NCBI RefSeq assembly: GCF_002113885.1
Contig: NW_018479907.1
Span: 1 to 64,000, forward strand
Source: Mizuhopecten yessoensis
Lineage: Eukaryota
Reading direction: 5' to 3'
DNA: 64,000 nucleotides
Part shown: in pieces, positions 1 to 64,000 of the stretch
Position numbering within the stretch: the stretch's first letter is position 1
How the letters are laid out: the number at the start of each line of letters is the position of its first letter
The notes under the pieces: generated by a model
Database searches by the model: none
Told to the model about the DNA's origin: nothing
The model's input: the letters and a program-made list of their open reading frames with translations, nothing else
Made by a program: the position numbers and the translations under genes

Positions 1-1237
1 TATCATGTTTATCTAACGGGGACTTGATGTTAAATTTTCCGATTTTTTTCACTTGTCGTTCTGACATGGGGTTTGCTAAATCGATATGGCTCCCAGGGAT
101 GCATCGTGGTTGTTTTCCGACGACAATCTTTCCCATCGCGTTATCACCAATGATATCATGTCCGGAAACAATTTGATGCTCGATGCTGACGGATGTGAAT
201 GACTTGCTCAACTCATCGACAAGGGTCTTACACGACTCCACTTCTGTCTGTCCTCTCTGATACAACACTATCGTCTCAATGTTGTCCTTTTCCTCTACGG
301 CTTTAATGGACGACTTTAGTGTATTTTTCATTCCATTAAAAAGACGTTTGAAATGCCGTGATGATGCCTCCATGTCTCTTTTCTCTTTTTTGAACAATGT
401 AATCATTTCGTCGGTAATGTTCTTCTGAAGTGTGTCCAGTCGTTTATCTACCTTTCGACGCAGGTCGGAGATGCTTTGCAGTGCGATTTCCTGGTTCTGT
501 ATCATGGTTTGGAGTTGCTCATCAAAGTCCTTCACTAGTGAGTTCATACTATCTGTTCCTTTCTTCAACGCCGCCTGCATGTCTTCTATCTGCGATCCTG
601 CTTTTATCTTCTTGCAATATTCCGTCACCTTTGGTACCTTTCCACAACTCATATGGTCTTCGATCACGCATTCGTTACAGCACAGAAGTTGGTGGTCCTC
701 ACAATACCGAACAATTTTCTCGCCGTGTTGATAACATCGAGGGGCAGACGTTTCCCTATTTAGTCGTTTGTTATGGTGTCCGGTGATATTCAGTATATCA
801 CAGTCAGTATGTATGATATCATGAAGTTTTACCTTACAATTGTCGCAGAAGTTCTCGTTCATCGTCTTGCACCAAAAACTGGCTGGGTTGTTCCGGTTAC
901 CTTTTGTCTGGCAGGGTTTGCAGTACAATGGTTCAGACGAACGTTCCCTAAGCTGGATAAGATCATGGATCAAACTATTGGTCGATAATTGCTCTGCCCA
1001 TTTAGCCTTTGATTCTGCTTGATTCACAGGAGAGGTCGTCCTCCTACAGATCGGACAAGGGAAGGATGTTGTCGACGCCATCTTCCCGGACAGCTCCTTT
1101 GTAATATATGTCCCGAGACAATCCTGACAGAAGGAGTGTAGGCACGGTAAGGATTTTGGTAGTTGAAGTTGCTCAAGGCATATTGGACACTCCAACAAAT
1201 GTGAGTCCAGTTCTGAAGGGAGGCTTCCTGAAGCCAT
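1..1237 (-). CDS. TRIM RING-Bbox-coiled-coil-NHL protein, copy 1 (3' part runs off the left edge)
   Basis: ATG at 1237 reads MASGSLPSELDSHLLECPICLEQLQLPKSLPCLHSFCQDC...CPICR (C3HC4 RING), then both B-boxes and the coiled coil. By manual translation it stays open to position 1 (...GKFNIKSPLDKHD). It is absent from the ORF track because there is no stop in the window. Closest to copy 5. Confidence 0.9.
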   Translation of the reverse strand, partial: MASGSLPSELDSHLLECPICLEQLQLPKSLPCLHSFCQDCLGTYITKELSGKMASTTSFPCPICRRTTSPVNQAESKAKWAEQLSTNSLIHDLIQLRERSSEPLYCKPCQTKGNRNNPASFWCKTMNENFCDNCKVKLHDIIHTDCDILNITGHHNKRLNRETSAPRCYQHGEKIVRYCEDHQLLCCNECVIEDHMSCGKVPKVTEYCKKIKAGSQIEDMQAALKKGTDSMNSLVKDFDEQLQTMIQNQEIALQSISDLRRKVDKRLDTLQKNITDEMITLFKKEKRDMEASSRHFKRLFNGMKNTLKSSIKAVEEKDNIETIVLYQRGQTEVESCKTLVDELSKSFTSVSIEHQIVSGHDIIGDNAMGKIVVGKQPRCIPGSHIDLANPMSERQVKKIGKFNIKSPLDKHD

Positions 1238-1265
1238 TGTAAAAGTCAGAAGAGTCAACACAGAT

Positions 1266-2209: not shown

Positions 2210-2279
2210 CAAGGGAACTCTTATCTACACAGATAGGAAGCACAGACTCCTACAGACCAGACATTTGTTTACACCTTGA

Positions 2280-2453
2280 GTCCGTATATAAAACAGGAAA
2301 TATGTCAAGCATTGTATAAATATCGAATGGAGAAGGTGGTATCACAATTCCGGATACTCGACGATTTTCTATGAGTTTTTATTTTATACTTTACTAAATA
2401 AAATTACATACAAGTTTCATGAACAATGCTATATCTTTAATGAAATAGAAACT
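2280..2453 (-). promoter_or_regulatory. Putative promoter of copy 1 with TATA-like, ETS-like and ISRE/IRF motifs
   Basis: Lies just upstream of the predicted exon 1: TATATAAAA/ACAGGAAAT at about 2285-2301, a conserved AATTCCGGATA, and AATGAAATAGAAACT at 2439-2453, which matches the GAAANNGAAACT consensus. Confidence 0.45.
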
Positions 2454-6304: not shown

Positions 6305-6490
6305 CGATAGATCGACTGTTTGTACGGTGCATTTTCACTAACTACTGACGTCAGTCCTCTGTCTGTACGGTATATACACTTAGTATTGACTACTGACGTC
6401 AGACCTCTGTCTGTACGGTACATACACCTTGTAATGACTACGGAGGGCGGTCGTCTGTCTGTACGGTACATACACATTGTTCTGACAATA
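6305..6490. repeat. 48-bp satellite, short array (about 4 units)
   Basis: Unit approximately CGGTCGTCTGTCTGTACGGTACATACACCTTGTACTGACTACGGAGGT; it produces the 16-aa periodic ORFs. Confidence 0.85.
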
Positions 6491-7916: not shown

Positions 7917-8626
7917 TTAGTACAGCTGAAAGACACGGATATAGTTCTTCTCGTCTTTACTACTATTATTAGTTACTACAAATTTGTCACCACAAACAGC
8001 TATTGCCCGTGGAGTGTCAATTCCATCTGATGAAGTCAGAAGTTCCCTGACGTGTGTTCCATCCCCAGACATCTGTACAATGTTGTTTGTTTCCCCACCA
8101 CACACGTAGATGTTACCCTCCCTGTCCACGCCTATTCCCCTAGCATACCTCACGACACCGACCTTCATCACATCTGTACGACGTTTGGCAGGCGACAGCC
8201 TAGACACCGCCACGTCCCCCGTGGTGTTATTACCTACACTGACAAGTGTGTCTACCTTTATTGGATCAGGAGTGAGGATCCAACATGTGCTGTTATAGTT
8301 ATATAAAAACTCGGCTGCTCCGTTCTGTGTCACAATGTATACTTCTCCTCCACTTGTAACTACGACAAACAGCTCGTCTGTATGTGTTATACCATAACAG
8401 TTGTTCACCAGACACATATCCCAGAGATTTTACCGAACAGTCAACTCGTCCAGGTACTGTCCTTTGTCTGTAAACAACTTCAGCTTTTGGTTGTTATAAT
8501 CACTTACTACTATTTGTGCACAGGGTAGGTACAGGGAAAGGACTTGGGTTGTTGAAGTCGCTCCAGGCAGATTGGACACTCGAGTAAGTGTAAGTCCAGT
8601 TCCGGAGGGAGGCCAACGGCAGCCAT
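7917..8626 (-). pseudogene. TRIM copy 2, internally deleted
   Basis: ATG at 8626 gives MAAVGLPPELDLHLLECPICLERLQQPKSFPC, joined out of frame to the NHL start (about 1162 nt missing relative to copy 3). A second, in-frame 108-nt deletion gives MCLVNN|CYG. The C-terminal NHL ORF 7917..8417 remains open. Confidence 0.92.
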
Positions 8627-10990
8627 TGTAAAAGTCAGACAGGGTCAACAAAGACCTGAAATAGACAATACAGTAGTTATAATTTAACACCAATAAGAAA
8701 GACAGCTATAGAAGCCGATAAATAACACCTCGAATATTATTAACGTGATTATTTTGTAAATGCCGATATTGTCCAAGTATTTCAATTGAGGTTTAGTCAT
8801 GTTTCCTGGTTTTATCTTATCGTTAATTCTGAAATAAAACAGACTGTCTAAGGACGACAGTGTGTCTAATATGACATATGGTCCGCAATGGCTAGCATTT
8901 CTATAGTACAAGTGATACCATTTGTTTTAATTTTTGAAAGGTTCCAGTCAGTTTTTGATAAATAATTGTAATGCTGAAGTTTGTAAGTATTTATCACAAA
9001 GTGATATATCTGGTATGGCTTATATACCACGCATTTGACATTGTATGTGTAGCGTATAATTCATGCAGTGGCATTGTTTACATTTCATATCGACCATCGA
9101 TGAAAACACTGTGTGAACTCGAACTTGTACTTGAATGTTCATTCCCGTTTAAATATGTCTTTTATTTACTTATTCTGAATACTACTTATCTGTGATCACA
9201 TTTAATGCTTTTCATATATTTACACTATTTGTATGGGGGCCTTTGTAGGTAAGGGACTCCAATCACTTAGAAACCTGGGATATGTATACTTTCATTGTCT
9301 GTGATGATTATTACTGTTTTTTTTATTAATATATGTGAGTATCTCCCTTTAGTTGTAATATAATATGTTGTTGTTATTTTACATATGTTTGTCGCAATAA
9401 TAGCTCTCAAGAGCTAATGTTCCTTGTTTACCTATAGGCGATGTTAAATTAAGTTTCTTGCATCTTGTATCTTGTAACACTGTTTGAACTCGAACTTTTA
9501 CTTAACTGTATATTTATGTCTGTGTATATGTAGAAGTGATAACATCATTTAATCAGAGACATACACAGATTGTTATCATACACATAAGTCCGTGTTTTTA
9601 TCCCCTCAAATTTAAACAAATATTTTGAAACCTATATCCTAAAATGGCCTCAACTGTTGATAGGACACTAAACCCTGTACAACCAAGCATTGTTGAGAGC
9701 TGATACTATGCTAGTGTTGAAGTCCTCTGACATAGCAGGAGCGGTAACTCTTGTTTATTCATGTCTCTAACACACTGTGTGCATGGATGTACATGAGAGT
9801 TTTCGTTTGATACTCATATAATAATATGCGTACGTTCTTACATGTAACGATGCTAACTAGTTATTTGCTATCAATACAAAGAAAGAAATTAAGAAGTATC
9901 TGTATTGTAGTACATACACAACTCTAATATACACAGAATATCATAGACTGTTTGAAAATACACAGAATATCATAGACTGTTTGTAAAATAAACATCACAT
10001 GTTAGGGTACAATATCACCTCTGTCCATTATACGCACCCAGTGAACACTTATTTAAACGGAAAACACAAACTCCCCTCCTAATCACCTTGAATCCGCCTC
10101 TCTAGACAATGAAGTAAGTAGTATAACTATCGAATGGGAAAGGCGGAGTCAAAATTCCGGATACTGCACGCTTCGTATTACTTAACGTTGTTTTTTTACA
10201 ACATTTTGTGTATCATTATTCACGATGTTATTAGCACGTGCTGGGTTTTTTTATGAAATAAAAAGAGGCTACATAAGTGTTCTGTTGTTGTTTGTGTTAT
10301 TAACGTTGAGTAAAAAATATAGAGTTCTTTAGTATAGTATAGACTTGCTTTAGTTGTTTTCTTTAGATTAGGAAGTATGGGAAGTTTTGATTAGTCAATC
10401 GTAGTATAACAGAAGACATTTCATTAGAAAAGGATAATGTGCTTTGGTTAGATGGATATGAGTATCAATATAGGTTCCATCACAGGAAAAGCCATGAGCA
10501 ATCTGATTATTTCCTAAGAAAATTAGGGGTGATAACGCCGACCAAAAGGTTAGAGTTGGGGTTATTTCGGCAGGTAGAAGGAAACTCTCTTAGACATACT
10601 TAAACAAGTAACGATATTACAGATACAATAGGTTAGCCTGGAGCTGGTGTGATTGATGGCGACTCTGTATCCCTCTTCCGGTCAAGTCGGGTCAAAATAA
10701 GGATAAGGCAACATTAGCCTAGGAGTAGTCTTTCATAAAACCATAATCTTCAATCAGTACATGTAGAATAGACGGCTCCTTCTCTCCTCTATCATCCCAA
10801 TCTGTCCCTTCATTACATACTTAATCCCCCTACTCATTTTATTGTTTTTTCTTTGTGTGTTGGGTATCCAAACTAATCGGTAGTGAATTGACCACTCAAA
10901 ACATTTTGGCTGCAACGTGAGAGGAACACACCTAAACGGAGGAAACAGTCAAGAGGCTAGTAAGGGTTATATGATGTCCTGTGTAGTTAA

Positions 10991-13036
10991 AGGGGCATCA
11001 CGGTGAAGTAACTATTTTTTTTGTCTTTTTTTCAAATACTACATAAACATATCAAGTGAGACTCCTTATGGAAAATAACGATCGGATTTGGCTGAAATAG
11101 ATTCATAAAAAATGATTAAATCTAAGATAATCATCGGTATTTCTACCTGTCTGACCAACGTTTTGTTCAGGGATTTCCCTCTACTAGCGCATGCGCATTG
11201 CACACCATTTCTTTGTAAACAAAATGACTGACCGTATGAAGTAAGCCAAAGAAAAATGTTGTACCGTGTCAGCTACGAAGCGAAAAGTTGCCAAATTGTC
11301 AAAAGATAGCGCACGGAGTACGTTACGGAATCATTATTACAGGTGGGAGTATTCAAAGGAGAAAACAACTGCCCTAGCAGTTAGTACGGTGCATGTNNNN
11401 NNNNNNNNNNNNNNNNNNNNNNNNNNNNNNNNNNNNNNNNNNNNNNNNNNNNNNNNNNNNNNNNNNNNNNNNNNNNNNNNNNNNNNNNNNNNNNNNNNNN
11501 NNNNNNNNNNNNNNNNNNNNNNNNNNNNNNNNNNNNNNNNNNNNNNNNNNNNNNNNNNNNNNNNNNNNNNNNNNNNNNNNNNNNNNNNNNNNNNNNNNNN
11601 NNNNNNNNTTTGTTTTTACATACAAAATTTAAATTAGTACTAATATGAATACCCGGCTTCCTCTGGCGCAACGACGTAATATATATAAAAAAAAAATATC
11701 GTCGTCAGAAAGCTACATTATCGCAGCTATAGAGTAAAAATGTCAAAATGACAGGCCAGGATGAATAACTGAGGAAGGAGAACCTACTTCTAGTAAATAG
11801 GATCGCGTAACATTTTTTTTTTAAATCGTAATATTTCAACAATCATGTTTTCATATGTTGTTGACTCAGAATGTATGATCATGTAACAACCTTTTCTCTA
11901 TAAAGAATTAATCGACTTCAGATAGAATCGGAATATGTATTGAAAACAGGGGAAGAGACATTTGTTTACGTTGAAAAATGACGCGTGCTGCCGATAACTA
12001 CGGCTTCTGTTTCGGACAAAAATGAAATGATTAAAGAAAACTTGGCTCAACATAAAAAGGGTCCATTGACAAGAATACTTTAATCTATGAAAAGTATTGA
12101 AAAAATATAATTATCAAGTAGCCCATATCTGACACATATTCTACATGTACACGTAGTGGTTTTGCCATACAGTTTAGTGTGTGTGTGATTGCTAATATGA
12201 CTTACTAAGTGTTAGCGTATGGAGACGGTGAAAGTGGGAAAGAGAGTATACATATTTGTTTATGCATGGTATAGAAAAAAACATAGGCCAAAGATATTGA
12301 GTTGTACAATGTAATAAAACAAATCACAAACGTTTCTCTTTTTTTATACGCGTGTAGTTTTTCATTGGATATATGCACTTTATGAAACATTTGAAAAGGA
12401 ATATTCGTCTCGTGAATAATCCTTTTTACAGAAAGGTTTGTCCCATGGTTGAAGAAAGGTGTTTAGCCCCGTACAGATGTCACATTTCGGTACTAAATTC
12501 AATACATATTTATATATATATTCTTTATGTTTATGCCTATTATCATTGTTGAAATTTAATTGTAAATGTATGACGGGAGAAGCCCGTGATAAATTGTAAA
12601 AACGTGTGCCCCATCCCTTGTTCAATTTTATTGTCAAGAAATATGTTTAAAGCTAAATAAATTTAAATTCTGAATATTGGCAAGTGTGCAATTAACTTAT
12701 AATGATGAATAACTACTGTTCAATAAGTTTTAATACGGACTTAGAAATCATATTACTTGGTTTCATAGTGCGGTAGGAAGTTGCAGTTGCCTGACGCCCC
12801 TCTCTGGGGGCCCCTTTGGAAACCGTTTCATCTCGCCCAGACCGCTCGTGTTTACTGCCTAGTCAGGTGACGTGACCGGCGCTATTTTTAGCAGGGCTTT
12901 CCCGAACAATTCAAGTGGTCAAACTGGACATTTGGAACGGACTATGAATATGGGGATAGCGAGGTAACATAAGTGGAAGTGCATACAATACATACATTCA
13001 TTAAAAAAAAAATATGGCGTTTCGCGTGATGTCCCT
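10991..13036. mobile_element. Kolobok-like non-autonomous DNA transposon
   Basis: TTAA at 10987-10990 and 13037-13040; TIRs AGGGGCATCACG / CGTGATGTCCCT; paralogous empty site GTGTAG-TTTA-TAGTCAAG at 37381; second copy at 41496-42969. TTAA target duplication with purine-purine termini is the Kolobok signature. Confidence 0.85.
11397..11608. other. Assembly gap (212 N)
   Basis: Run of N inside the Kolobok-like element. The equivalent stretch in the second copy (about 41902-42303) is about 400 bp. Confidence 0.99.
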
Positions 13037-13094
13037 TTAATAGTCAAATTTAATTACATAATGTATATCGATTGATAGTGTCCATAGTCACATA

Positions 13095-14643: not shown

Positions 14644-14644
14644 C

Positions 14645-17545: not shown

Positions 17546-17547
17546 TA

Positions 17548-20500: not shown

Positions 20501-20636
20501 CTCAGAGTTCGCTCGTCTGTCTATACGACACATACACAAGGTTTTGACTATAGAGGTCAATCGTCTGTCTGAACGGTACATATACCTTGTACTAATTTTA
20601 TAGATTAAGTGTCTGTCTGTACGGTACATACACATT
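17548..20636. repeat. 48-bp satellite, main array (about 3.1 kb) with a duplicated non-satellite insert
   Basis: Tandem degenerate 48-mers. A non-satellite block of about 190 bp recurs at about 17810-18000 and 19140-19350. Confidence 0.95.
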
Positions 20637-21143: not shown

Positions 21144-23126
21144 TTACAGTAACTGAAAGAGACGGATATAGTTCCTCTCCTCGTGTGTACTACTAGTATT
21201 AGTTACTACAAATGTGTCACCACAAACAGCTATGGCTGTTGGATTGTCCATTCCATCTGATGACTTCAGCAGCTCTCTGACGTGTGTTCCGTCCACAGAC
21301 ATCTGTACGACGTTGTGTGATCCCCCACCACACACATAGATGTTACCCTCTCTGCCAACGTCTATCCCTCTAGCTTCCCTCACGACGCCGACTTTCGCCA
21401 CATCCGTACAACGTTTGTCAGCCGACAGTCTAGATAGCGCGAGGTCCCCCGGGATGGTGTTACTGACACTGACAAGTGTGTCTCCCTTTTTGATATCATG
21501 AGTGAGGAACCGGCATGTGCTGTTATATTTGTATACAAACCCGGCTGCTCCGTCCTGTCTCACACTGTATACTGCTCCCCCACCTGTACCCACGACCAAC
21601 TTCCCGTCTATATTTGCTATACCATAACAGTTTTTACCATTTAACACATTGATTGAAGATGTCAGGGATAGTTTTGAGGCCTTGACTTTCATGAGGTTAA
21701 CACATCCAGGACTGCTGACAGCAACCGCTACCGTGTAGTTGTTTACCAGACACATATCCCAGGGATTTCCTCGAACGGTCACCTCGTTCAGGTACTGTCC
21801 TTTGTCTGTAAATAACTTAACCTTTTTGTTGTAGAAATCACTCACTACTACATGTGCACTCGGCATATACACAACACCATGGGCATAGCTATTATGTTTA
21901 TCTGACGGGGACTTGATGTTAAATTTTCCGATTTCTTTTACACGTCGTTCTGACATGGGGTTTACTAAATCGCTATGGCAACCAGGAATGCATCGTGTTT
22001 GTTTCCCGACGACGATCTTTCCCATCGCGTTATCTCCAATGATATCATGTTCGAGGACAATGTGATGCTCGATGCTGACGAATGTAAATGACTTGTTTAT
22101 CTCCGTGACAAGGCTCTTACACGACTCCACTTCTGCCTGTCCTCTCTGATACAACACTATCATCTCAATGTTGTTGTTTTCCTCTACGGCTTTAATGGAC
22201 GATTTCAGGGTATTTTTCATTCCGTTCATCAGACGCTCGCACTGCCGTGATGATGCCTCCATGTCTCTTCTCTCTTTTTTGAACAATGTAATCAAATCGT
22301 CGGTGATGTCCTTCTGGAGTTTGTCAAGTCGTTTATCGACCTTTTCACGCAGGTCGGAGATGCTCTGCAGTGCGATTTCCTGGTTCTGTATCATGGTTTG
22401 GAGCTGTTGATCAAAGTCCTTCACTAATGAGTTCATACTCTCTGTTCCTTTCTTTAACGCCGCCTGCATGTCTTCTAGCTGCGATCCTGCTTTTACCTTC
22501 TGACAATATTCCGTCACCTTTGGTACTTTTACACAACTCCAATGGTCTTCGATCACGCATTCGTTGCAGCACAGAATTTGGTGATCCTCACAATACCGAA
22601 CCATTTTTTCGCCGTGTTGATAACACCGAGGGGCAGACGTTTCTTTATTTTGTCGTTTGCTGTTGTTCCCGGTGACATTAAGTATATCACAATCATTATG
22701 TATGATATCGTGAAGGTGAACCTTACACGTGTCACAAAAGTTCTCGTTCATCGTCTTGCACCAAAAACTGGCTGGGTTGTTCAGGTTACCTTTTGTCTGG
22801 CAGGGTTTGCAGTACAATGGTTCAGACGAACGTTCCTTTAGCTGGAGAAGTTCGTTTATCACAGTATTAGTCGGAAAATGTTTTGCCCATTTATCCTTTG
22901 TTTTAGTCTGATTAACCGGATGGGTCATCCTTCTACAAACTGGACAAGAAAATGATGTTGCCGACGCCATCTGCCCGGACATTTCCTTGGTGATACAAGT
23001 TCCTAGGCAATCCTGACAGAAGGAGTGGAGACAGGGTAAGGACTTGGGTTGTTGAAGTCGCTCAAGGCAGATTGGACATTCCAGTAGCTGTAAGTCAAGT
23101 TCCGCAGGGAGACCGCCTTCAGCCAT
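21144..23126 (-). CDS. TRIM RING-Bbox1-Bbox2-coiled-coil-NHL E3 ubiquitin ligase, copy 3 (660 aa, intact; TRIM2/3/56/71-type architecture)
   Basis: RING CPIC..LPCLHSFCQDC..CPVCR; B-box1 CKPC..WCKTM..CDTC..H..H; B-box2 CYQH..YCEDH..CCNEC..H; heptad region; NHL-type blades (PWDMCLV, RGIDV..GNIYVC, PTAIAV..FVVT). Confidence 0.95.
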   Translation of the reverse strand: MAEGGLPAELDLQLLECPICLERLQQPKSLPCLHSFCQDCLGTCITKEMSGQMASATSFSCPVCRRMTHPVNQTKTKDKWAKHFPTNTVINELLQLKERSSEPLYCKPCQTKGNLNNPASFWCKTMNENFCDTCKVHLHDIIHNDCDILNVTGNNSKRQNKETSAPRCYQHGEKMVRYCEDHQILCCNECVIEDHWSCVKVPKVTEYCQKVKAGSQLEDMQAALKKGTESMNSLVKDFDQQLQTMIQNQEIALQSISDLREKVDKRLDKLQKDITDDLITLFKKERRDMEASSRQCERLMNGMKNTLKSSIKAVEENNNIEMIVLYQRGQAEVESCKSLVTEINKSFTFVSIEHHIVLEHDIIGDNAMGKIVVGKQTRCIPGCHSDLVNPMSERRVKEIGKFNIKSPSDKHNSYAHGVVYMPSAHVVVSDFYNKKVKLFTDKGQYLNEVTVRGNPWDMCLVNNYTVAVAVSSPGCVNLMKVKASKLSLTSSINVLNGKNCYGIANIDGKLVVGTGGGAVYSVRQDGAAGFVYKYNSTCRFLTHDIKKGDTLVSVSNTIPGDLALSRLSADKRCTDVAKVGVVREARGIDVGREGNIYVCGGGSHNVVQMSVDGTHVRELLKSSDGMDNPTAIAVCGDTFVVTNTSSTHEERNYIRLFQLL

Positions 23127-44458: not shown

Positions 44459-46438
44459 TTACACTAACTGAAAGATACGGATATAGTCCCTCTCGTCGTC
44501 TGTAATACTAGTATTAGTTACTACAAATGTGTCACCACAAACAGCTATTGCCCGTGGATATGTTATTCCATCTGATGACGTCAGCAGCTCTCTGACGTGT
44601 GTTCCGTCTCCTGACATCTGTACGATGTTGTTTGATTCCCCACCACACACGTAGATGTTACCCTCTCTGTCCACGTCTATTCCTCTAGCTTCCCTCACGA
44701 CACCGACTTTCGCCACATCCGTACGACGTTTGTCAGCCGAAAGTCTAGATACCGCGACGTCCCCCGGGTTGGTGTTATTGACACTGACAAGTGTGTCTCC
44801 CTTTTTGATATCATGAGTGAGGGACCGACATGTGTTGTTATATCTGTATAACAAGTCGGCTGCTCCGTTCTGTGTCACACTGTATACTTCTCCCTCGCCT
44901 GTACCCACGACCAACCTCCCGTCTGTATGTGTTATACCATAACAGTTTTTACCATTTGACACATTGATCGCAGATGTCAGGGAGAGTTTTGAGGCCTTGA
45001 CTTTCATGAGATGAACACAGCCAGGACTGCTGACGGCAACCGCTATCGTGTTTTTGTTTACCAGACACATATCCAAGGGATTTCCACGAACAATCACCTC
45101 GTTCAGGTACTGTCCTTTGTCTGTAAATAACTTCAGTTTTTTGTTGTAGAAATCACTTACTACTATCTGTGCACTCGGCATACACATAACGCCACGGGCA
45201 TAGCTATTCTGTTTATCTGACGGGGACTTGATGTTAAATTTTCCGATTTCTTTCACACGTCGTTCTGACATGGGGTTTGCTAAATCGATATGGCTCCAAG
45301 GGATGCATCGTGGTTGTTTTCCGACGACGATCTTTCCCATCGCGTTATCACCAATGATATCATGTCCGGGAACAATTTGATGCTCGATGCTGAGGGATGT
45401 AAATGACTTACACAACATAGTGACCAGAGTCCTACACGACTCTACTTCTGACTGCCCTCTCTGATACAACACTATCGTCTCAATGTTGTCGTTTTGCTTT
45501 ACGGCGTTAATGGACGACTTCAGGGTATTTTTCATCCCGTTCATCAGGCGTTCGCACTGCCGTGATGATGCCTCCATGTCTCTTTTCTCTTTTTTGAACA
45601 ATGTAATCATCTCGTCGGTGATGTATTTCTGAAGTTTGTCAAGTCGTTTATCGACCTTTTGACGCAGGCCGGAGATGCTCTGCAGTGCAACTTCCTGGTT
45701 CTGTATCATGGTTTGGAGTTGATCATCAAAGTCCTTCACTCAGGAGTTCAAACGATCATTTCCTTTCTTCAACGCCGCCTGCATGTCTTCTAGTTGCGAT
45801 CCTGCTTTTACCTTATGGCAATATTCCTTCATCTTTGGTACTTTTCCACAACTCCTATGGTCTTCGATCACACATTCGTTGCAGCACAGACGTTGGTGAT
45901 CCTCACAATACCGAACCATTTTCTCGCCGTGTTGATAACACCGAGGGGCAGACGTTTCCCTATTTAGTCGTTTGCTATGGTTTCCGGTGACATCCAGTAT
46001 ATCACATTCAGTGTGTATGATATCATGAAGTTCTAACTTACAAATGTTGCAAAAGTTCTCGTTCATCGTCTTGCACCAATAACTGGCCGGGTTGTTCAGG
46101 TTACCTTTTGTCTGGCAGGGTTTGCAGTACAATGGTTCAGACGAACGTTCCTTAAGCTGGATAAGATCCTGGATCAAACTATTAGTCGGGAATTGCTCTG
46201 CCCATTTAGCCCTTGATTCTGCAAGCTGAACAGGAGAGGTCGTCATCCTACAGATCGGACAAGGGAAGGATGTTGTCGACATCATCTTCCCGGACAGTTC
46301 CTTTGTAATATATGTCCCGAGACAATCCTGACAGAAGGAGTGTAGGCACGGTAAGGACTTTGGCAGTTGAAGTTGCTCAAGGCATATTGGACACTCCAAC
46401 AAGTGTGAGTCCAGTTCTGAACTCACACTTGTAGCCAT
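44459..46438 (-). pseudogene. TRIM copy 5: full-length 659-codon frame interrupted only by one in-frame TGA (45740-45742)
   Basis: The ORFs 45740..46462 and 44459..45739 abut in the same frame. The true ATG is at 46438. The acceptor (46467), donor (47401) and AATAAA are intact. Confidence 0.85.
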
Positions 46439-53159: not shown

Positions 53160-55090
53160 TTAGCACAGCTGAAAGAAACGAATATAGTTGTTCTCGTCTG
53201 TAGTACTATCATTAGTTACCACAAATGTGTCGCCACAAACAGCTATTGCCCATGGAGAGTTAATTCCATCTGATGACGTCAGAAGTTCCCCAGACATCTG
53301 CACGACGTTGTGTGATCCCCCACCACATACGTAGATGTTACCTTCCCTGTCAATGTATATTCCCCTAGGATCCCTCACGACACCGACCTTCATCACATCC
53401 GTGTGACGTGTATCTGCCGACAGTCTAGACACCGCGACCTCCCCTGTGGTGGTGATCCTGACACTTACGAGTGTGTCACCCTTTATTGGATCATGTGTTT
53501 AAGACCAACAGTAGTTATTATATTTGTATAACAACTCGGATGCTCCGTTCTGTGTCACACTGTGTACTGGTCCTCGACCTGTACCAAAGACAAACTTACC
53601 GTCTGTATGTGTTATACCATAACAGTTCTTACCATTTGACATGTTAATATCAGATACCAAGGTAAGTTTTGAGTCCTCGACCTTTACGACACGTACACCA
53701 CCAGGACTGTTGATTGCGACCGTCACTGTTTTGTCGTCCACCAGACACATATCCCAGGGATTCCCCCGAACCGTGAACTCATCCGGGAACTGTCCTTTGT
53801 CTGTAAACAATTTCAGCTTTTTGTTGCTGTAATCACTCAGAACTATATGTGCACATGGCAGGTACACAACTCCAACAGCAGAGCAATCATATCGATCTGG
53901 GGGTAGCTTGATGTTGAACTTTCTGATTTCTGTTACGCGTCGTTCTGACATGGGGGTTGCTAAATTGATATAGCCCCCAGGGATACATCGTGGTGTTTTC
54001 TCGAAGACAATCTGTCCCATCGCGTTATCGCTAATAATATCATGTCCGGGAACAATTTGATGATCGATGCTGACGGATGTGAAGGACTTGCTTATCTCCG
54101 TGACAAGGGTCTTACACGACTCCACTTCCGTCTGTCCTCTCTGATACAACACTATCGTCTCAATGTTGTCGTTTTCCTCTACGGCTTAAATGGACGACTT
54201 CAGGGTATTAAGCATACCATTCATCAGACGTTCACACTGCAGTAATGATGCCTCCATTTCTCTTTTCTCTTCTTTGAACACGATAATCAACTCGTCGGTG
54301 ATGTCTTTCTGAAGCTTGTCTAGTCGTGTATCGACCTTTTTACGCAGGTCGGAGATACTCTGCAGTGCGATTTCTATTTTTTTTATCATGGTTTGGAGTT
54401 GTTCATCCAGTCATTCACAAGTGAGTTCATATTCTCTGTTCCTTTCTTCAACGCCTGCATGTCTTGTAGTTGCGATCCTGCTTTTATTTTCTGAAAGTAT
54501 TCCGTCATTTTTTTTTTCTTTCTCCGCAATTCCTTTGGTCTTCGATCATGCATTCGTTACAGCACAGACGTTGGCGATCCTCACAATACCGAACCCTTTT
54601 CTCGTCGTGTGTGTGGTCGTTTCCTATGGCTTCTGGTGACATTCATTATATCACAGTCATTATGTATGATATCATGAAGTGTTACCTTACAAGTGTTGCA
54701 AAAAATATCGTTCATTGTCTTGCACCAGAAACTGGCTAGGTTGTTTGAGTTACCTTTTGTCTGGCAGGGTTTGCAATACAATGGTTCAGACGAACTTTCC
54801 CTTAGCTGGATAAGGTCCTTTGTCACCGAAATAGTCGGAAATTGTTCTGCCCATTTGTCCTTGGTTTGGGCCTGATTGACCAAAGGGGTCATCCTCCTAC
54901 AAACTGGACAGGTGAATGATGTTGACGACGCCATCTTCCCTGAGAGTTCTTTGGTGATATAGGTACCTAGGCAATCCTGACAGAAGGAGTGGAGACAGGG
55001 TAAGGACTTGGGCTGTTGAAGACGCTCCAGGCAGATTGGACATTCCAGTAAGTGTAAGCCCAGTTCCGGAGGAAGACCACATTCAGCCAT
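53160..55090 (-). pseudogene. TRIM copy 6
   Basis: Fragmented ORFs: frameshifting deletions at about 54600 and 54410, TAA at 54186 and 53499, and an 18-nt deletion at about 53290. The acceptor (AG to TG, 55120-55121) and donor (GT to CT, 56070) are both mutated. Confidence 0.93.
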
Positions 55091-58000: not shown

Positions 58001-58154
58001 TAGGTAAAGACACTGATTCCTCCAGCGTTTACACCAGCACTTACATGTTTGAAGTAAAGTTTGTATAGATGTATGCACGGTGTTTATTCTATCGTCAAGA
58101 TATAAGCATACATTTCAAGTGTCCAGCACACATCTACTTTTCTTTGTATTTCAT

Positions 58155-60134
58155 TTAGCACAGTTGAAAGACACGGATATAGTTGCTCTCGTTTGTAGTA
58201 CTGTTATTAGTGACCACAAATGTATTACCACGAACAGCTATTGCACATGGCTTGACCATTCCATCTGATGACGTCAGCAGTTCCCTGACGTGTGTCCCGT
58301 CCATAGAGATCTGAACGACGTTGTGGGAATCAAACCCACACACGTAGATGTTACCCTCCATGTCCACGTCTATTCCCATAGCTCCCTTCACGACTCCAAC
58401 ATTTAACACATCCGTACGACGTTTGTCAGCCGACAGTCTAGATACCGTGACGTCTCCCTGTGTGATGTTATTGACACTGACAAGTGTGTCTCTTCTTTTG
58501 ATATCATGAGTGAGGGACCGGCATGTGTTGCTATATTTGTATACCAACCCGGCTGCTCCGTCCTGTCTCAAACTGTATACTTCTCCTCCACCCGTACCAA
58601 CGACCAACTTCCCGTCTATATGTGCTATACCATAACAGTTTTTATCATTTAACACCTTGATTGTAGATGTCAGGGAGAGTTTTGAGGCCTTGACCTTTAT
58701 GAGGTTAACACATCCAGGACTGCTGAGAGCAACCGCTACCGTGTTGTTGTTTACCAGACACATATCCCAGGGATTTCCCCGAACATTCAACTCGTCCAGG
58801 TACTGTCCTTTGTCTGTAAATAACTTCAACTTTTTGTTGTAGAAATCACTTACTATTATCTGTGCACTCGGTACATACACAACACCACGGACATAGCTAT
58901 TCTGTTTATCTGACAGGGACTTGATGCTAAATTTTCCGATTTCTTTCACACGTCGTTCTGACATTGAATTTACTAAATCGCTATGGCTCTCAGGGATGCA
59001 TCGTGGTTGTTTCCCGACGACGATCTTTCCCATCGCGTTACCACTAATGATATCATGTCTGGGAACAATTTGATGCTCGATGCTGACGGATGTGAATGAT
59101 TTACTCAACTCAGTGACCAGGGTCCTACACGACTCCACTTCTGCCTGTCCTCTCTGATACAACACTATCATCTCAACGTTGTCGTTTTCATCTACGGCTT
59201 TAATGGACGATTTCAGGGTATTTTTCATTCCGTTCATCAGACGTTCGCACTGCCGTGATGATGCCTCCATGTCTCTTTTCTCATCTTTGAACAAGGTAAT
59301 TAACTCGTCGGTGATGTCTTTCTGAAGCTTGTCTAGTCGTATGTCGACCTTTTGACGCAGGTCGGAGATGCTCTGCAGTGCGATTTCCTGTTTCTGTATC
59401 ATGGTTTGGAGCTGTTCATCAAAGTCCTTCACTAATGAGCTCATACTCTCTGTTCCTTTCTTCAACGCCGCCTTCATGTCTTCTAGCTGCGATCCTGCTT
59501 TTACCTTCTGACAATATTCCGTCACCTTTGGTACTTTTACACAACTCCAATGGTCTTCGATCACGCATTCGTTGCAGCACAGAATTTGGTGATCCTCACA
59601 ATACCGAACCATTTGTTCGCCGTGTTGATAACACCGAGGGGCAGACGTTTCTTTTTTTTGTCGTTTGCTGTGGTTTCCGGTGACATTAAGTATATCACAA
59701 TCATTATGTATGATATCGTGAAGGTGAACCTTACAAGTGTCACAAAAGTTCTCGTCCATCGTCTTGCACCAAAAACTGGCTGGGTTGTTCATGTTACCTT
59801 TTGTCTGGCAGGGTTTGCAGTACAATGGTTCAGACGAACGTTCCTTTAGCTGGATAAGTTCGTTTATCACAGTATTAGTCGGAAAATGTTTTGCCCATTT
59901 ATCCTTGGTTTCTGTCTGATTAACCGGATGGGTTATCCTCCTACAAACTGGACAAGAAAATGATGTTGCCGACGCCATCTGCCCGGACATCTCCTTGGTG
60001 ATACAAGTTCCTAGACAATCCTGACAGAAGGAGTGAAGGCAGGGTAAGGACTTGGGTTGTTGAAGTCGCTCTAGGCAGATTGGACATTCCAGTAAGTGTA
60101 AGTCCAGTTCCGGAGGGAGACCGCCTTCAGCCAT
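58155..60134 (-). CDS. TRIM RING-Bbox1-Bbox2-coiled-coil-NHL E3 ubiquitin ligase, copy 7 (659 aa, intact)
   Basis: Same motifs as copy 3. Predicted 5'UTR intron 60164..60995 with canonical sites. Confidence 0.95.
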   Translation of the reverse strand: MAEGGLPPELDLHLLECPICLERLQQPKSLPCLHSFCQDCLGTCITKEMSGQMASATSFSCPVCRRITHPVNQTETKDKWAKHFPTNTVINELIQLKERSSEPLYCKPCQTKGNMNNPASFWCKTMDENFCDTCKVHLHDIIHNDCDILNVTGNHSKRQKKETSAPRCYQHGEQMVRYCEDHQILCCNECVIEDHWSCVKVPKVTEYCQKVKAGSQLEDMKAALKKGTESMSSLVKDFDEQLQTMIQKQEIALQSISDLRQKVDIRLDKLQKDITDELITLFKDEKRDMEASSRQCERLMNGMKNTLKSSIKAVDENDNVEMIVLYQRGQAEVESCRTLVTELSKSFTSVSIEHQIVPRHDIISGNAMGKIVVGKQPRCIPESHSDLVNSMSERRVKEIGKFSIKSLSDKQNSYVRGVVYVPSAQIIVSDFYNKKLKLFTDKGQYLDELNVRGNPWDMCLVNNNTVAVALSSPGCVNLIKVKASKLSLTSTIKVLNDKNCYGIAHIDGKLVVGTGGGEVYSLRQDGAAGLVYKYSNTCRSLTHDIKRRDTLVSVNNITQGDVTVSRLSADKRRTDVLNVGVVKGAMGIDVDMEGNIYVCGFDSHNVVQISMDGTHVRELLTSSDGMVKPCAIAVRGNTFVVTNNSTTNESNYIRVFQLC

Positions 60135-61019
60135 TGTACGGGTCAGAATGAGTCAACACAGACCTGAAATATAAAATGGCAGTAGTTATAATTTAATACC
60201 AATAAGAAAGACAGCTACAGAAGCCGATAAGTAACACGTGGACTATTATTTACGTGATTATGTAATAAATACCGATGCAATTTAGTCATCATTAATATTG
60301 TCCAAGTAATTTAATTTAGGTTAAGTTATGTTTCCCTCTTTCATCTCATAGTTAATTCTGATTTTAAAAAACTATCTATGGAAGACATTGTGTCTAATAT
60401 GATATATGGTGCGCAAAGGCTAGCGTTTCTATAGTACAAGTGGTACCATTTGTTTTAGTTTTTGAAAGCTTCCAGTCGGTTTTTGATAAATAATTGTAAT
60501 GTTGAATACATTAGTCTGTATTATAATCACCTCAAATTTAAACAAATATGTTGAAACCTATGTCCTGAAATGACCTTAAGTGTTGATAGGACATTTTACC
60601 CTGAACAACCAACCATTGTTGAGAACTGATACTATACTAGGGTTGAAGTCCTTAAACGTAGCAGGGGAGGTAACTCTTATTTATTCATGTCGCCAAAATA
60701 CTGCATACATGGATGCACATGAGAGCTTTCGTTTGATACGCATATAATAATATGCGTACGTTCCTACATTCGTACGTTCTTACATGTAACGATATTTACT
60801 AGCTATTTGCTAACAGTACAAACAATATATGCTAAAAAATAATTAATAAGTGTCGGTATGTATATGTCTAACACAGCAAAAGTGTGTCTGCATTGTAGTA
60901 CAGGTAAAATTGTATTATACACAGATAACATAGATTGTTTGTAAAATAAACACCACAGGCTAGGGTACAATATCACATTTGTCCATTACACTCACCCAGT
61001 GAACAATTATTTACACGGA

Positions 61020-64000
61020 AGACACAAACTCCTCTCCCAACAGCAACCGTGTTTTTTGTCACACCTCGAATCCGTCTCTCACCTAACGTGGGGTACATGT
61101 CTTATCCGTAATTCATCTATTTTTAAATCATGCCTATAAATACTAAAACAGGTTTCAACCGGATGTGTTGCTCAGGAACATTCAATAATCTTGAGCAAAA
61201 TAAGAAAAAGTAGAAGACGATAGATATATGTATTTCATATCCATAGACCAGTTCCTACTTGATTACAATGGCCCAGCAAGTCGAGACATGTTCAGGCGTG
61301 TGTTGGGCATTATCGTCAGCCATATTGAAAACCTATCTATTACGCATGTACTCAATCTATGTCTGTGCATAAAATTAATGATACAAAACATGTATTATAT
61401 CAAATAAAGGTTACCTTGTTCAAGCAAAATGTCTGCGGAATTAATCCATGACACATGTAGTTTTAAACCCACTAAATTTACCATAGAACATGTATATAAT
61501 CTATTATAGGTCATGACAGTATATTTACACATGTGTGCATACGGTACTGTATGCACACACCAGTAAAGACCTACCAGCCCCTTCAGCTTGAACAGTTACA
61601 TAATTAGACGCCAGTGTTGTTTTGGAACTTTCTTTAAAAACAATGGGGTGAGGGGGGAGACGAAAAGACAATAAACTTAATTGTATGCGACCTGTCTGGA
61701 CTTGTCCTTTCATGTTCAAACATTATGTATGTCCGACATAATTGTGTTATCGATATCTCATTATTCTTACTGTATGATCCATATTTGATATCAATTCACC
61801 ACTAAGTGAAGAAATATTATAATTTAAATATTCTTATCATAATAGCACCATGCCCTATGGTCTAAAATCGTATATGTGTATCTCAATTGTATGCACACCT
61901 ACACTACGAAGCAATAAATACCTGTGTGCTTTCAACCGGTAAGACACTGTGTATACATGCTTCGTTTTTATTAGCCATGTATCATAAATTCTGTCGGAGT
62001 TTTGCTTGTAATTGCATCAGTGATATCACTATGCATTTGTGTGAAAATGTTATGATGCCCGATTGTAAGTTTGATACAATGGTTGTTCTATTTTCTTGAG
62101 TTCTTGTGATAATTAGTGCTCTTGTAATAAACTAAAATATGAATTTTGACATGCTAAAAATAACACCAACGCCAATTCACAGCATGCGTAACATATCCCC
62201 TAGCACCCAGGACACCCGCTGTCACCTTGTATCATTGTGAAATTACTGTATTTTTATCAGGTCATCTGATAGTGTATATCTAATCAAGCACTACTCTAAA
62301 TATAATTCAGTAATGCGATGCTCTTTAGGTAAATGATCAGTTGATTTGCAATATTTGTTTATTTTTCATAATTGTCATTAGGGTGCATATTTCAATTATT
62401 ATGGTAACTTTATCGGGATTGTTATAATTGTTTTATATTTAACAAGTGTTGTATCATGAGATGAAGAAAAAGAAATAAAACAAATCAATGATTACTCCTT
62501 TTCTGTGATTGTGTATATCTGCTATTCTTCACGAAATAAAGATAACATGAATCAATATGGGATTGTAAAAAGTCAAATAAAAATGAGCCGTCTGGCCGTA
62601 ATTGCTGACTGTTTGTTCCTGGTGCCTGTGGTACATAATTCACATTGATATTAGACATGTAAAACTGATAGTCTAAAGACATGTCGTCAGAGACTAACAT
62701 TTAATGTTCAGGGTTCATTCCTATCCACTACTTATTGACAATTGACATATATCGATTACATCACTAGATAATTGACAGTTAGTAATTGCAAAAAATACGT
62801 TAATTCCCATTTGTTTAGGTGTTTGTATAGTTTATAGATCAGATGAATATTGTTACATAATTATTGAATATGATAAAAAGATGACACTCTAGAATAATAG
62901 CGACAGTGTGTATATGTTCTTTTATTTTAGTTGAAACTGATGATTCCTAGCGTATCTGTGAAGACATACTACATTGGTTAGATTATTTTCAGTGTATGCA
63001 TCTTAGAGCATTTTTTTTTTTTTTTTTTTCGATCATAAGGATAAACAAAAAGTGTGAAAATTGACTAACAAACCAAGTGTTCACTGTATACCATTTACAC
63101 GAGTTATACATACGGATTTACTTGTCTTCGTCTCTACCTGTATAGTTCGTGACAACCAGCACATCACACCTATCTCATATTTATGATATGGATACAAGAA
63201 AACGAATGTAATTTAAACATTTGGTTATTTAATGTGTTTCGTTGTAAAGCTATAGATTTACTACACTCACACTAAAACATTGCTGATAGGTAGAGAAACT
63301 GATTCCTCCAGCGTTTATACCAGCACTTATATGTTTAAAGTAAAGTTTGTATAGATATATGCACGGTGTTTATTCTATCGTCAAGATATAAGCATACATT
63401 TCAAGTGTCCAGCACACATCTACTTTTCTTTGTATTTCATTTAGCACAGTTGAAAGACACGGATATAGTTGCTCTCGTTTGTAGTACTGTTATTAGTGAC
63501 CACAAATGTGTTACCACGAACAGCTATTGCACATGGCTTGACCATTCCATCTGATGACGTCAGCAGTTCCCTGACGTGTGTCCCGTCCATAGAGATCTGA
63601 ACGACGTTGTGGGAATCAAACCCACACACGTAGATGTTACCCTCCATGTCCACGTCTATCCCCATAGCTCCTTTCACGACTCCAACATGTAACACATCCG
63701 TACGACGTGTGTCAGCCGACAGTCGAGATACCCCGACGTTTCCCTGTGTGATGTTATTGACACTGACAAGTGTGTCTCTTCTTTTGATATCATGAGTGAG
63801 GGACCGGCATGTGTTGCTATATTTGTATACCAACCCGGCTGCTCCGTCCTGTCTCAAACTGTATACTTCTCCTCCACCCGTACCAACGACCAACTTCCCG
63901 TCTTTATGTGCTATACCATAACAGTTTTTATCATTTAACACCTTGATTGTAGATGTCAGGGAGAGTTTTGAGGCCTTGACTTCTATGAGGTTAACACATC
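61020..64000. repeat. Recent tandem duplicate of about 56100-58715
   Basis: Collinear intergenic DNA plus near-identical 3'UTR and NHL exon of copies 7 and 8. Confidence 0.88.
63441..64000 (-). CDS. TRIM copy 8, NHL C-terminal part (5' part beyond the right edge)
   Basis: Open frame nearly identical to the copy 7 C-terminus. Confidence 0.9.
   Translation of the reverse strand, partial: CVNLIEVKASKLSLTSTIKVLNDKNCYGIAHKDGKLVVGTGGGEVYSLRQDGAAGLVYKYSNTCRSLTHDIKRRDTLVSVNNITQGNVGVSRLSADTRRTDVLHVGVVKGAMGIDVDMEGNIYVCGFDSHNVVQISMDGTHVRELLTSSDGMVKPCAIAVRGNTFVVTNNSTTNESNYIRVFQLC

What the first reader, a model, noticed from the sequence alone, without database searches (positions are those of the whole stretch)
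1..64000. Birth-and-death TRIM-NHL array: constant E3 module with a variable propeller, a candidate diversified innate-immune sensor locus
Seen: at least 8 same-strand copies, and the array continues past both edges. Copies 3 and 7 differ at about 11 of the first 232 residues but at about 43 of the last 168 (manual count). Changes cluster at equivalent blade positions across copies: NPTA/YPRA/KPCA/TPRA/SPWA, EARG/GAMG/EAKG/DPRG/YARG, CGGG/CGGE/CGFD/CGND, CRF/CRS/CWI/CWS, SYAHG/SYARG/SYVRG/CCPYG/CSAVG. Known: the equivalent positions form the ligand-binding top face of NHL propellers (Brat, LIN-41/TRIM71), and TRIM56 is antiviral. Inference: this is an NHL-based counterpart of the variable SPRY domain of TRIM5 and fish finTRIMs.
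Basis: partly seen in the sequence, partly recalled or inferred. Interest (0 to 1): 0.8.

Follow-up and report, generated by a model that had tools for sequence, protein, structure and literature searches.

The report
Diversifying TRIM-NHL gene array in scallop
This is a tandem cluster of scallop ubiquitin-ligase genes, half of them dead copies, whose target-binding propeller face evolves under diversifying selection much as vertebrate antiviral TRIM genes do; an immune role has not been tested.

Summary
The window is bases 1-64000 of a 111-kb Mizuhopecten yessoensis scaffold. It holds eight minus-strand copies of an intronless 660-codon RING / B-box / coiled-coil / six-bladed NHL-type propeller gene. 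Two are intact (C, G), two are cut by the window ends (A, H), and four are broken (B, D, E, F). Three more copies lie further along the scaffold. The assembly gap is intergenic and interrupts no copy.

So do its motif variants. Part of the C-G gradient is historical: dS also rises threefold along the gene. The copies are mosaics, with a 423-nt identical conversion tract and conflicting trees for the two halves. The recent pair G/H' shows the reverse gradient.

Even so, site models find ω≈2.5-3 at 12-16% of propeller codons (2ΔlnL 42-84) and no such class in the RBCC half. The selected sites lie on the d-a and b-c loops, the top face, and not on the bottom loops. A site class defined only from other scallop species gives ω=2.0 (p=6e-10).

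The immune function and the TRIM56 link remain untested inference.

The parts
2..1237 (-). Copy A: the N-terminal 412 codons (RING, B-boxes, coiled coil, start of propeller). It has no stops or frameshifts and is cut by the window start, which is the scaffold end.
7917..8626 (-). Copy B: a dead fragment. Codons 1-31 are joined to the propeller codons from about 420 onward, with further deletions and a stop at codon 453.
11397..11608 (.). Assembly gap (N) in intergenic sequence. It lies in no copy and was not filled.
21144..23126 (-). Copy C: intact single-exon gene of 660 codons. Layout: RING 17-64, B-box1 about 105-146, B-box2 166-198, coiled coil 216-346, six-bladed NHL-type propeller 396-660.
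30996..32864 (-). Copy D: pseudogene. It has a 5-nt deletion at nt 408, a 106-nt deletion at nt 1353, and in-frame stops at codons 326 and 364 when read in the reference frame.
44459..46438 (-). Copy E: full length, with a single nonsense codon (TGA at 45740-45742, where the other copies have TTA Leu). It is a mosaic: the N-terminal part is nearest to A and the propeller is nearest to C.
53160..55090 (-). Copy F: pseudogene with seven indels and two stops. The indels in its first ~1650 nt (five of the seven) are also present on the second contig (L011), which ends there, so they are not assembly errors.
58155..60134 (-). Copy G: intact single-exon gene of 659 codons.
63441..64000 (-). Copy H: the C-terminal 185 codons, cut by the window end. 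It is 95-99% identical to G, and its counterpart on the second contig (P0002) is an intact 659-codon gene.
21147..21938 (-). Propeller-coding part of copy C (codons 396-660). Codons with posterior >0.95 for ω>1: 411, 414, 416, 431, 456, 471, 499, 515, 537, 586, 601, 602, 627, 628, 630, 644, 651, 660.

Best explanation
This is a tandem array of scallop RBCC-NHL E3 ubiquitin-ligase genes. It grew by segmental duplication of units of 5-14 kb, each made of at least 2 kb of upstream sequence, a single-exon coding region and a short downstream flank. It turns over by birth and death: on the 111-kb scaffold at least 3 copies are intact and at least 4 are dead.

Shown here:
- Paralogues exchange sequence by gene conversion or unequal crossing-over. 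The detected tracts lie in the RING / B-box / coiled-coil half, which is under purifying selection (ω 0.35).
- The six-bladed NHL-type propeller carries a class of about 12-16% of codons with ω of about 2.5-3.
- Those codons sit at equivalent positions in each blade, on the d-a and b-c loops that form the top face. The bottom loops and the core stay constrained.

Inferred, not shown:
- The coiled coil dimerises the protein.
- The variable top face binds a variable ligand.
- The conserved RING ubiquitinates that ligand or starts a signal. Each paralogue would then be a different specificity of one recognition-plus-E3 device, functionally analogous to TRIM5α and fish finTRIMs.
- The selective agent is most plausibly a pathogen or another genetic-conflict partner.
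For: Architecture:
- Pfam finds RING, a weak B-box and NHL. PDB sequence hits are to TRIM28 RBCC and to TRIM2/3/71.
- The AlphaFold model has pLDDT >90 over the propeller, with 24 strands in a 6x4 arrangement.
- Foldseek's best single-domain matches are the NHL domains of Thin, TRIM2, TRIM3, Lin41, Brat and Mei-P26, with target TM-scores of 0.72-0.78.

Array:
- Copies are mapped. Flanks are homologous between units.

Recombination:
- Trees for the two halves conflict, AU p=6e-6 and 3e-14.
- Copies are mosaics by nearest-neighbour scan.
- I and J share a 423-nt identical tract at 87% overall identity, P about 2e-23.

Selection:
- My codon-model code reproduces IQ-TREE's M0 log-likelihood.
- Propeller: M1a/M2a 2ΔlnL=42 with 10 undisrupted sequences (9 intact genes plus the undisrupted part of H), 84 with 16 sequences. 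M8a/M8 gives 43.5 and 82.
- RBCC half: 0 and 0.2-1.7.
- The signal survives giving each third of the propeller its own tree: 2ΔlnL 18, 3 and 28.
- 21 of 26 selected sites lie on the top face, Fisher p=6e-5. Mean posterior is 0.28 on top, 0.065 on the bottom, 0.07 in the core.
- Tree-free pairwise ω: top 0.64, bottom 0.33, core 0.32, RBCC 0.23.
- The 32 columns most variable in Argopecten and Pecten paralogues (30 of 32 on the top face) give a median pairwise ω of 1.3-1.4 in the intact M. yessoensis genes. Their joint ML estimate is ω=2.0, against ω=1 p=6e-10.

Face definition: PMC4015489.
Against: - There is no expression, binding or infection data, so the function is inferred from an evolutionary signature alone.
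- The site models are my own implementation. Branch lengths were fixed up to a scale factor, there were 10-16 sequences, and posteriors are naive empirical Bayes.
- Recombination inside each propeller third is not excluded.
- Synonymous-rate variation among sites is not modelled.
- The top face as a whole has ω of about 1, which alone would fit relaxed constraint.
- The face assignment rests on strand topology from DSSP. I could not obtain 3D coordinates.
- Some apparent pseudogenes, such as E with its single nonsense codon, could be polymorphisms or sequencing errors.
Confidence: 0.7

Rival explanations
1. There is no adaptive diversification. The propeller is simply less constrained, and gene conversion keeps the 5' half similar, which creates the appearance of a constant module joined to a variable one.
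For: - For C against G, dS rises from 0.099 to 0.308 along the gene.
- Conversion tracts are concentrated in the RBCC half.
- G/H' shows the reverse gradient.
- Whole-propeller ω is 0.65, and the whole top face has ω of about 1.0.
- Half of the copies are pseudogenes.
Against: - A site class with ω of 2.5-3 is strongly preferred over ω=1: M8a/M8 2ΔlnL=43.5 using undisrupted sequences only.
- A site class defined in advance from other species has ω=2.0, p=6e-10, and tree-free ω>1 in 24-29 of 36 pairs.
- Bottom loops, equally loop-like, stay at ω of about 0.33-0.38.
- The recombining RBCC half gives no false signal.
Confidence: 0.12
2. The diversification is real, but the ligand is not a pathogen. 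The paralogues could be RNA-binding regulators like canonical TRIM-NHL proteins, with targets such as transposon or endogenous RNAs. Alternatively they could act in self/non-self or gamete recognition or in other intragenomic conflict.
For: - The nearest folds are the RNA-binding NHL domains of Brat, Lin41/TRIM71 and Mei-P26.
- The Brat top face is an RNA-binding platform (PMC4015489).
- No immune data exist for this family.
Against: - Net charge of the top-face residues varies from -4 to +5 among paralogues, not uniformly positive as reported for RNA-binding TRIM-NHL domains (PMC4015489).
- In oysters, TRIM2/3-like genes are repeatedly found among genes that respond to or associate with OsHV-1 and Perkinsus (PMC9892467, PMC9437489). 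That evidence comes from another bivalve family and from other genes.
Confidence: 0.25
3. The copy number is an assembly artefact, produced by uncollapsed haplotypes or mis-joins around the gap.
For: A second scaffold is 97-99% identical to window 38.5-64 kb, so this assembly does hold near-duplicate sequence. One gap lies inside the window.
Against: - Apart from the recent G/H pair (95-99% over their shared part), copies within the window differ by about 9-18% at the nucleotide level and in their flanks. That is far beyond allelic divergence.
- No two other window copies are near-identical.
- The gap is intergenic.
Confidence: 0.03

Closest known systems
Fish finTRIM / btr / hltr multigene families and primate TRIM5α/TRIM22
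   Same: - RBCC E3 module joined to a C-terminal recognition domain.
- Clustered multigene families with lineage-specific expansion.
- Positive selection concentrated in surface loops of the C-terminal domain, against a background of recombination (PMC3137616).
   Different: - The recognition domain here is a six-bladed NHL-type propeller, not B30.2/PRY-SPRY.
- The host is a protostome. SPRY 'group 2' TRIMs are reported as absent from invertebrates (PMC2533329).
- No antiviral activity or inducibility has been shown.
Canonical TRIM-NHL proteins (Brat, LIN-41/TRIM71, TRIM2, TRIM3, TRIM32/Thin, Mei-P26)
   Same: - RBCC plus six-bladed NHL propeller.
- Foldseek target TM-scores of 0.72-0.78.
- The top face, formed by the b-c and d-a loops, is the ligand-binding face (PMC4015489).
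   Different: - The canonical proteins are single-copy, slowly evolving 'group 1' genes (PMC2533329), and most have a filamin domain.
- This family has no filamin domain and both B-boxes.
- Sequence identity to solved NHL domains is only 13-18%. The Pfam NHL score is marginal: 27 bits in C and 17.5 in G, against a cut-off of 20.
- The family has at least 188 hits (E ≤ 0.001) across four scallop species, and its top face is under diversifying selection with no uniform positive charge.
Bivalve TRIM expansions (oyster TRIM2/3-like genes)
   Same: Large lineage-specific TRIM repertoires in bivalves. In oysters many members respond to OsHV-1 or Perkinsus, or associate with resistance to them (PMC9892467, PMC9437489).
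   Different: - Those reports concern expression or association in Ostreidae.
- Ten full-text searches found no paper describing tandem-array structure, gene conversion, or site-specific positive selection on the NHL top face. The library is open-access only.
Human TRIM56
   Same: - R-B1-B2-CC layout followed by a C-terminal region with NHL-like similarity (PMC2533329).
- The RING of copy C hits the TRIM56 RING at E=2e-10.
   Different: - TRIM2 and TRIM3 RINGs and TRIM28 RBCC score as well or better.
- Orthology was not tested.
- NCBI's names for the paralogues are inconsistent.

Membership tests
TRIM / RBCC family | N-terminal RING finger with a complete set of zinc ligands | tested here: met
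   PF00097 scores 33.5 bits (cut-off 21) and PF13445 scores 38 bits. C17, C20, C32, H34, C37 and C64 are invariant, and C40 and C61 are at least 90% conserved, across 98 homologues.
TRIM / RBCC family | One or two B-boxes following the RING | tested here: inconclusive
   PF00643 scores 21.2 bits, below its cut-off of 24.1, and the ANCHR-like B-box scores 16.8 bits. The Cys/His columns at 106-146 and 168-198 are invariant or nearly so, and TRIM28 RBCC aligns over residues 12-323 at E=5e-14.
TRIM / RBCC family | Long coiled coil following the B-boxes | tested here: met
   The AlphaFold model has helices at 216-315 and 319-346.
TRIM-NHL (class VII) | C-terminal six-bladed NHL β-propeller | tested here: met
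   The model has 24 strands in six blades with pLDDT >90. Foldseek matches the NHL domains of Thin, TRIM2/3/71 and Brat at target TM-scores of 0.72-0.78. The profile hits TRIM71, TRIM3 and TRIM2 NHL at E=1e-20 to 1e-17. Pfam NHL reaches 27 bits in C but only 17.5 in G, against a cut-off of 20.
TRIM-NHL (class VII) | Filamin/Ig domain between the coiled coil and the NHL domain (present in TRIM2/3/71, absent in TRIM32) | tested here: not met
   There is no filamin hit in Pfam. Only a short, low-confidence β-hairpin lies at 348-377. The layout is therefore like TRIM32/Thin or TRIM56.
TRIM56 orthologue | Reciprocal-best or phylogenetic orthology to vertebrate TRIM56 | not tested
   Only a RING-level hit to 5jw7. 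The paralogues carry many different NCBI names.
Diversified TRIM restriction-factor or sensor families (TRIM5, finTRIM type) | Clustered multigene family with turnover of copies | tested here: met
   Eleven copies lie on the 111-kb scaffold, both intact and dead.
Diversified TRIM restriction-factor or sensor families (TRIM5, finTRIM type) | Positive selection focused on ligand-binding loops of the C-terminal domain | tested here: met
   using my own ML implementation. It should be repeated with PAML or HyPhy.
Diversified TRIM restriction-factor or sensor families (TRIM5, finTRIM type) | B30.2/PRY-SPRY recognition domain | tested here: not met
   There is no SPRY hit, and the C-terminal domain is an NHL-type propeller. 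This family is an analogue, not a member.
Diversified TRIM restriction-factor or sensor families (TRIM5, finTRIM type) | Induction by infection, or direct antiviral or pathogen-binding activity | not testable with these tools
   No expression or functional data are available. Only indirect oyster literature exists.

The most novel reading that the evidence does not exclude
Scallops, and perhaps bivalves generally, have convergently built a TRIM5/finTRIM-like repertoire of intracellular recognition E3 ligases. The hypervariable recognition surface is the top face of an NHL propeller rather than a SPRY domain. The repertoire is diversified by tandem duplication, domain-level recombination and positive selection, possibly with haplotypes that differ in gene content.
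Probability: 0.4. Interest if true: 0.75.

Novelty: new variant of a known kind. Interest (0 to 1): 0.62.

Why it matters
TRIM families that diversify under pathogen pressure are known in vertebrates and use the SPRY domain. NHL-type TRIMs are regarded as the conserved, developmental, RNA-binding branch of the family (PMC2533329, PMC4015489).

An NHL propeller with two hot loops per blade on its ligand-binding face, in a family of at least 188 hits (E ≤ 0.001) across four scallop species, would be a second and independent structural route to a variable intracellular receptor joined to an E3 ligase. It would give bivalve immunology a concrete set of candidates. Bivalves have no adaptive immunity and suffer viral mass mortalities.

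The family is also a clean natural case of one module kept uniform by gene conversion and another diversified by selection, with predicted specificity-determining residues that can be swapped and tested.

Tried and rejected
- A first multi-process fit of the site models timed out, because the sandbox has one CPU. I refitted with L-BFGS.
- IQ-TREE does not print ω for codon models in the place I parsed. I used my own M0, whose log-likelihood equals IQ-TREE's.
- Treating the whole structurally defined top face as one class gives ω of only 0.64 pairwise and about 1.0 by ML. I therefore rejected the claim that the whole face is positively selected and kept the claim for a subset of sites.
- Ten intergenic ORFs had no Pfam hit. 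They lie in minisatellites. Rfam found nothing.
- Ten literature searches found no description of this family or of positive selection on an NHL domain in bivalves. The library is open-access only, so this absence is weak evidence.
Face assignment therefore used DSSP strand order, the N-terminal closing strand, and the WD40-like register of blade 1.
- I did not use the large representative-protein search, because the word search already placed the family.
- Nothing in the window or the fetched loci looked human.
- All the genes are single-exon ORFs, so no spliced model had to be joined.
- Broken copies were read in the reference frame, with codons at breaks and stops masked as gaps. No letters were supplied at breaks or in the N gap.


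Full report
**What is there.**
ORF listing and tblastn with the longest ORF show eight copies of one gene, all on the minus strand.
- Two are intact single-exon ORFs of 660 and 659 codons: C at 21144-23126 and G at 58155-60134.
- A (2-1237) and H (63441-64000) have no disruptions but are cut by the window ends.
- B is an internally deleted fragment.
- D has 5-nt and 106-nt deletions.
- E has a single TGA where the other copies have TTA.
- F has seven indels and two stops.

**Where it comes from.**
Homology search places the window in Mizuhopecten yessoensis (Yesso scallop). At least 188 hits (E ≤ 0.001) occur in four scallop species, under inconsistent NCBI names: TRIM25-, TRIM56-, TIF1β- and TRIM2-like. 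The window is bases 1-64000 of the 111,252-bp scaffold NEDP02076580.1. The left edge is therefore the scaffold end. To the right lie three more copies: I is intact, J carries a 1-nt and a 516-nt insertion, and K has a 114-nt in-frame deletion.

**The gap.**
N 11397-11608 lies in non-coding sequence between B and C. No TRIM similarity lies within 2.7 kb on either side. It interrupts no copy. The ORFs that span it are artefacts of translating N. Continuity across it cannot be checked, and I did not try to fill it.

In a codon alignment projected onto C's frame, C and G differ at 12 of the first 232 residues and 42 of the last 167. All the motif variants it quoted are present.

**Architecture.**
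- Pfam gives RING above threshold, B-box just below it, and NHL at 27 bits in C (cut-off 20) but 17.5 in G.
- PDB sequence hits are to TRIM28 RBCC and to parts of the TRIM2/3/71 NHL domains.
- An AlphaFold model built on 98 homologues has mean pLDDT 81.7, and above 90 across residues 400-660. It shows a RING, two B-boxes, a coiled coil of about 130 residues, and 24 strands forming six four-stranded blades. The N-terminal strand 396-403 closes blade 6.
- Foldseek's best single-domain matches are the NHL domains of Thin, TRIM2, TRIM3, Lin41/TRIM71, Brat and Mei-P26, with target TM-scores of 0.72-0.78 and rmsd of 3.2-3.9 Å.
- There is no filamin domain, so the layout resembles TRIM32/Thin or TRIM56.

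**How the array grew.**
Upstream flanks of at least 2 kb, and 0.25-0.7 kb downstream, are homologous between units at 65-87% identity, lower than the coding regions at 82-91%. The copies are therefore segmental tandem duplicates, not separate retro-insertions. Six more distant paralogues elsewhere in the genome are singletons within ±10 kb.

**Is the gradient selection or history?**
A threefold rise in synonymous divergence thus underlies the sixfold rise in non-synonymous divergence.
- The copies are mosaics. E is nearest to A in its first 150 codons and nearest to C in the propeller.
- I and J share a 423-nt perfectly identical tract (codons 168-308) at 87% overall identity, P about 2e-23. 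C and H' share a 230-nt identical tract. Every significant tract lies in the RBCC half.
- Trees for codons 1-395 and 396-660 reject each other, AU p=6e-6 and 3e-14.
- The recent pair G/H' has 22 of its 31 differences in the N-terminal half.

**Site models.**
PAML and HyPhy are not installed, so I wrote GY94-F3x4 site models. Branch lengths came from IQ-TREE's codon M0 and were fixed up to one scale factor. My M0 log-likelihoods equal IQ-TREE's exactly.

| Region | Sequences | M0 ω | M1a/M2a 2ΔlnL | M8a/M8 2ΔlnL |
|---|---|---|---|---|
| Propeller (396-660) | 10 undisrupted | 0.65 | 42 | 43.5 |
| Propeller (396-660) | 16 | 0.67 | 84 | 82 |
| RBCC half (1-395) | 10 undisrupted | 0.35 | 0 | 0.2 |
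| RBCC half (1-395) | 15 | 0.37 | 0 | 1.7 |

The 10 undisrupted sequences are the nine intact genes plus the undisrupted partial copy of each half (H for the propeller, A for the RBCC half). In the propeller, 12-16% of codons fall in a class with ω of 2.5-3.0. The RBCC half recombines visibly yet gives no signal, so it serves as an internal control against false positives caused by recombination. Giving each third of the propeller its own tree keeps the signal in blades 1-2 (2ΔlnL 18, p=1e-4) and blades 5-6 (28, p=8e-7), but not in blades 3-4 (3, not significant).

**Where the selected sites lie.**
Codons with posterior >0.95 (M8, 16 sequences) are 411, 414, 416, 431, 456, 471, 499, 515, 537, 586, 601, 602, 627, 628, 630, 644, 651 and 660. 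They recur about every 42 residues in two series:
- just before or at the start of strand a of each blade;
- in the b-c turn of each blade.

In NHL propellers the b-c and d-a loops form the top surface by definition. In Brat that surface is the RNA-binding platform (PMC4015489).

Using the DSSP strand order:
- 21 of 26 sites with posterior >0.9 are on the top face, Fisher p=6e-5.
- Mean posterior is 0.28 on top, 0.065 on the bottom and 0.07 in the core.

The strand register is supported by the closing N-terminal strand and by HMMER aligning blade 1 in register with WD40-type repeats.

**Checks that do not depend on one tree or on circular site choice.**
- Pairwise NG86 among nine intact genes gives median ω of 0.64 for the top face, 0.33 for the bottom, 0.32 for the core and 0.23 for the RBCC half. 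There is an asymmetry, but the top face as a whole is not above 1.
- I then defined a site class without using M. yessoensis data: the 32 propeller columns with the highest entropy among 53 Argopecten and Pecten paralogues. Thirty of the 32 are on the top face.
- In the intact M. yessoensis genes these columns have a median pairwise ω of 1.29, or 1.44 against whole-propeller dS. ω exceeds 1 in 24-29 of 36 pairs. The remaining columns have ω of 0.34.
- In a joint ML model with shared neutral branch lengths, ω for this class is 2.0 (undisrupted set, 2ΔlnL=38 against ω=1, p=6e-10) and 2.1 (all copies, p=1.5e-17). The whole top face gives ω of about 1.0 and the rest 0.41.

**Interpretation.**
Shown:
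- a birth-and-death tandem array;
- gene conversion and mosaicism;
- purifying selection on the RBCC module;
- diversifying selection on a subset of top-face loop positions of an NHL-type propeller.

Inferred:
- the top face binds a ligand that differs between paralogues;
- the conserved RING then ubiquitinates that ligand or signals, as in TRIM5α and finTRIMs, where B30.2 loops are the selected surface (PMC3137616).

The immune reading is plausible by analogy. In oysters, TRIM2/3-like genes recur among genes that respond to or associate with OsHV-1 and Perkinsus (PMC9892467, PMC9437489). It is untested for this family.

Net charge of the top-face residues ranges from -4 to +5 among paralogues, unlike the uniformly positive RNA-binding faces described for canonical TRIM-NHL proteins. 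This mildly favours varied, possibly protein, ligands, but it is weak evidence.

**Comparison and novelty.**
NHL TRIMs belong to the conserved 'group 1'. The fast-evolving, species-specific 'group 2' is SPRY-based and is reported as absent from invertebrates (PMC2533329). This family behaves like group 2 but uses an NHL-type domain in a protostome. The genes themselves are already annotated, and bivalve TRIM expansions are known. I found no report of top-face diversifying selection, or of the array's mosaic structure, in ten full-text searches of an open-access library. I therefore rate it a new variant of a known kind.

**Caveats.**
- The codon models are my own code, with fixed relative branch lengths, naive empirical Bayes posteriors, no synonymous-rate variation, and 10-16 sequences.
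- The source is a short-read assembly with uncollapsed near-duplicate scaffolds.
- E's single stop could be a sequencing error or a polymorphism.

No sequence looked human. No spliced model was needed. Nothing was filled in at gaps or breaks.

Noticed in passing
window 31500-64000 against loci L011 and L005 (scaffold NEDP02001248.1): A second 64.8-kb scaffold is collinear with this part of the array. Identity is 99.1% over F-G-H, with the G protein identical, and 97.9% in the E-D spacer. At D's position, however, it carries an intact 659-codon gene (P0005) that is only about 89% identical to pseudogene D. It is either an alternative haplotype with different gene content or a very recent segmental duplicate.
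   Followed up: partly
window 58155-60134 (G) against L011:10001-11980 (H', P0002): This recent tandem pair differs at 31 residues, 22 in codons 1-395 and only 9 in the propeller. It shows no differences after codon 578.
   Followed up: yes
scaffold copies I (75571-77538) and J (88490-90977), outside the window: I and J share a 423-nt perfectly identical tract (codons 168-308) although they are 87% identical overall. It is a recent gene-conversion tract in the B-box2 / coiled-coil region.
   Followed up: yes
window 13124-14116, 35915-36852, 37456-38147; 6341-6475, 17541-20633; 29559-30042: Minisatellites lie between the gene copies. A 27/54-nt unit occurs three times, with the 35.9-kb and 37.5-kb arrays in opposite orientation. 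A 48-nt unit lies downstream of several copies. There is also a GC-rich 30-nt unit. They account for the long intergenic ORFs, which have no Pfam hits.
   Followed up: partly
copy C residues 409-460 (window about 21750-21900): Blade 1 of the propeller scores better against cyanobacterial and designer WD40-type repeats (2ymu, WRAP-T) than against NHL repeats in HMMER, although the whole domain matches NHL propellers best by fold.
   Followed up: no
window 10987-11396: The 410 bases directly left of the assembly gap are a dispersed repeat. A copy with 94.6% identity lies on the second scaffold (L005:1074-1483). I did not use it to look across the gap.
   Followed up: no
locus L010:21332-21980 (scaffold NEDP02005557.1): One paralogue (P0014, 836 aa) is annotated as fused to RT_RNaseH domains of a retroelement. 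This is probably a gene-model artefact or a transposon insertion next to a family member.
   Followed up: no
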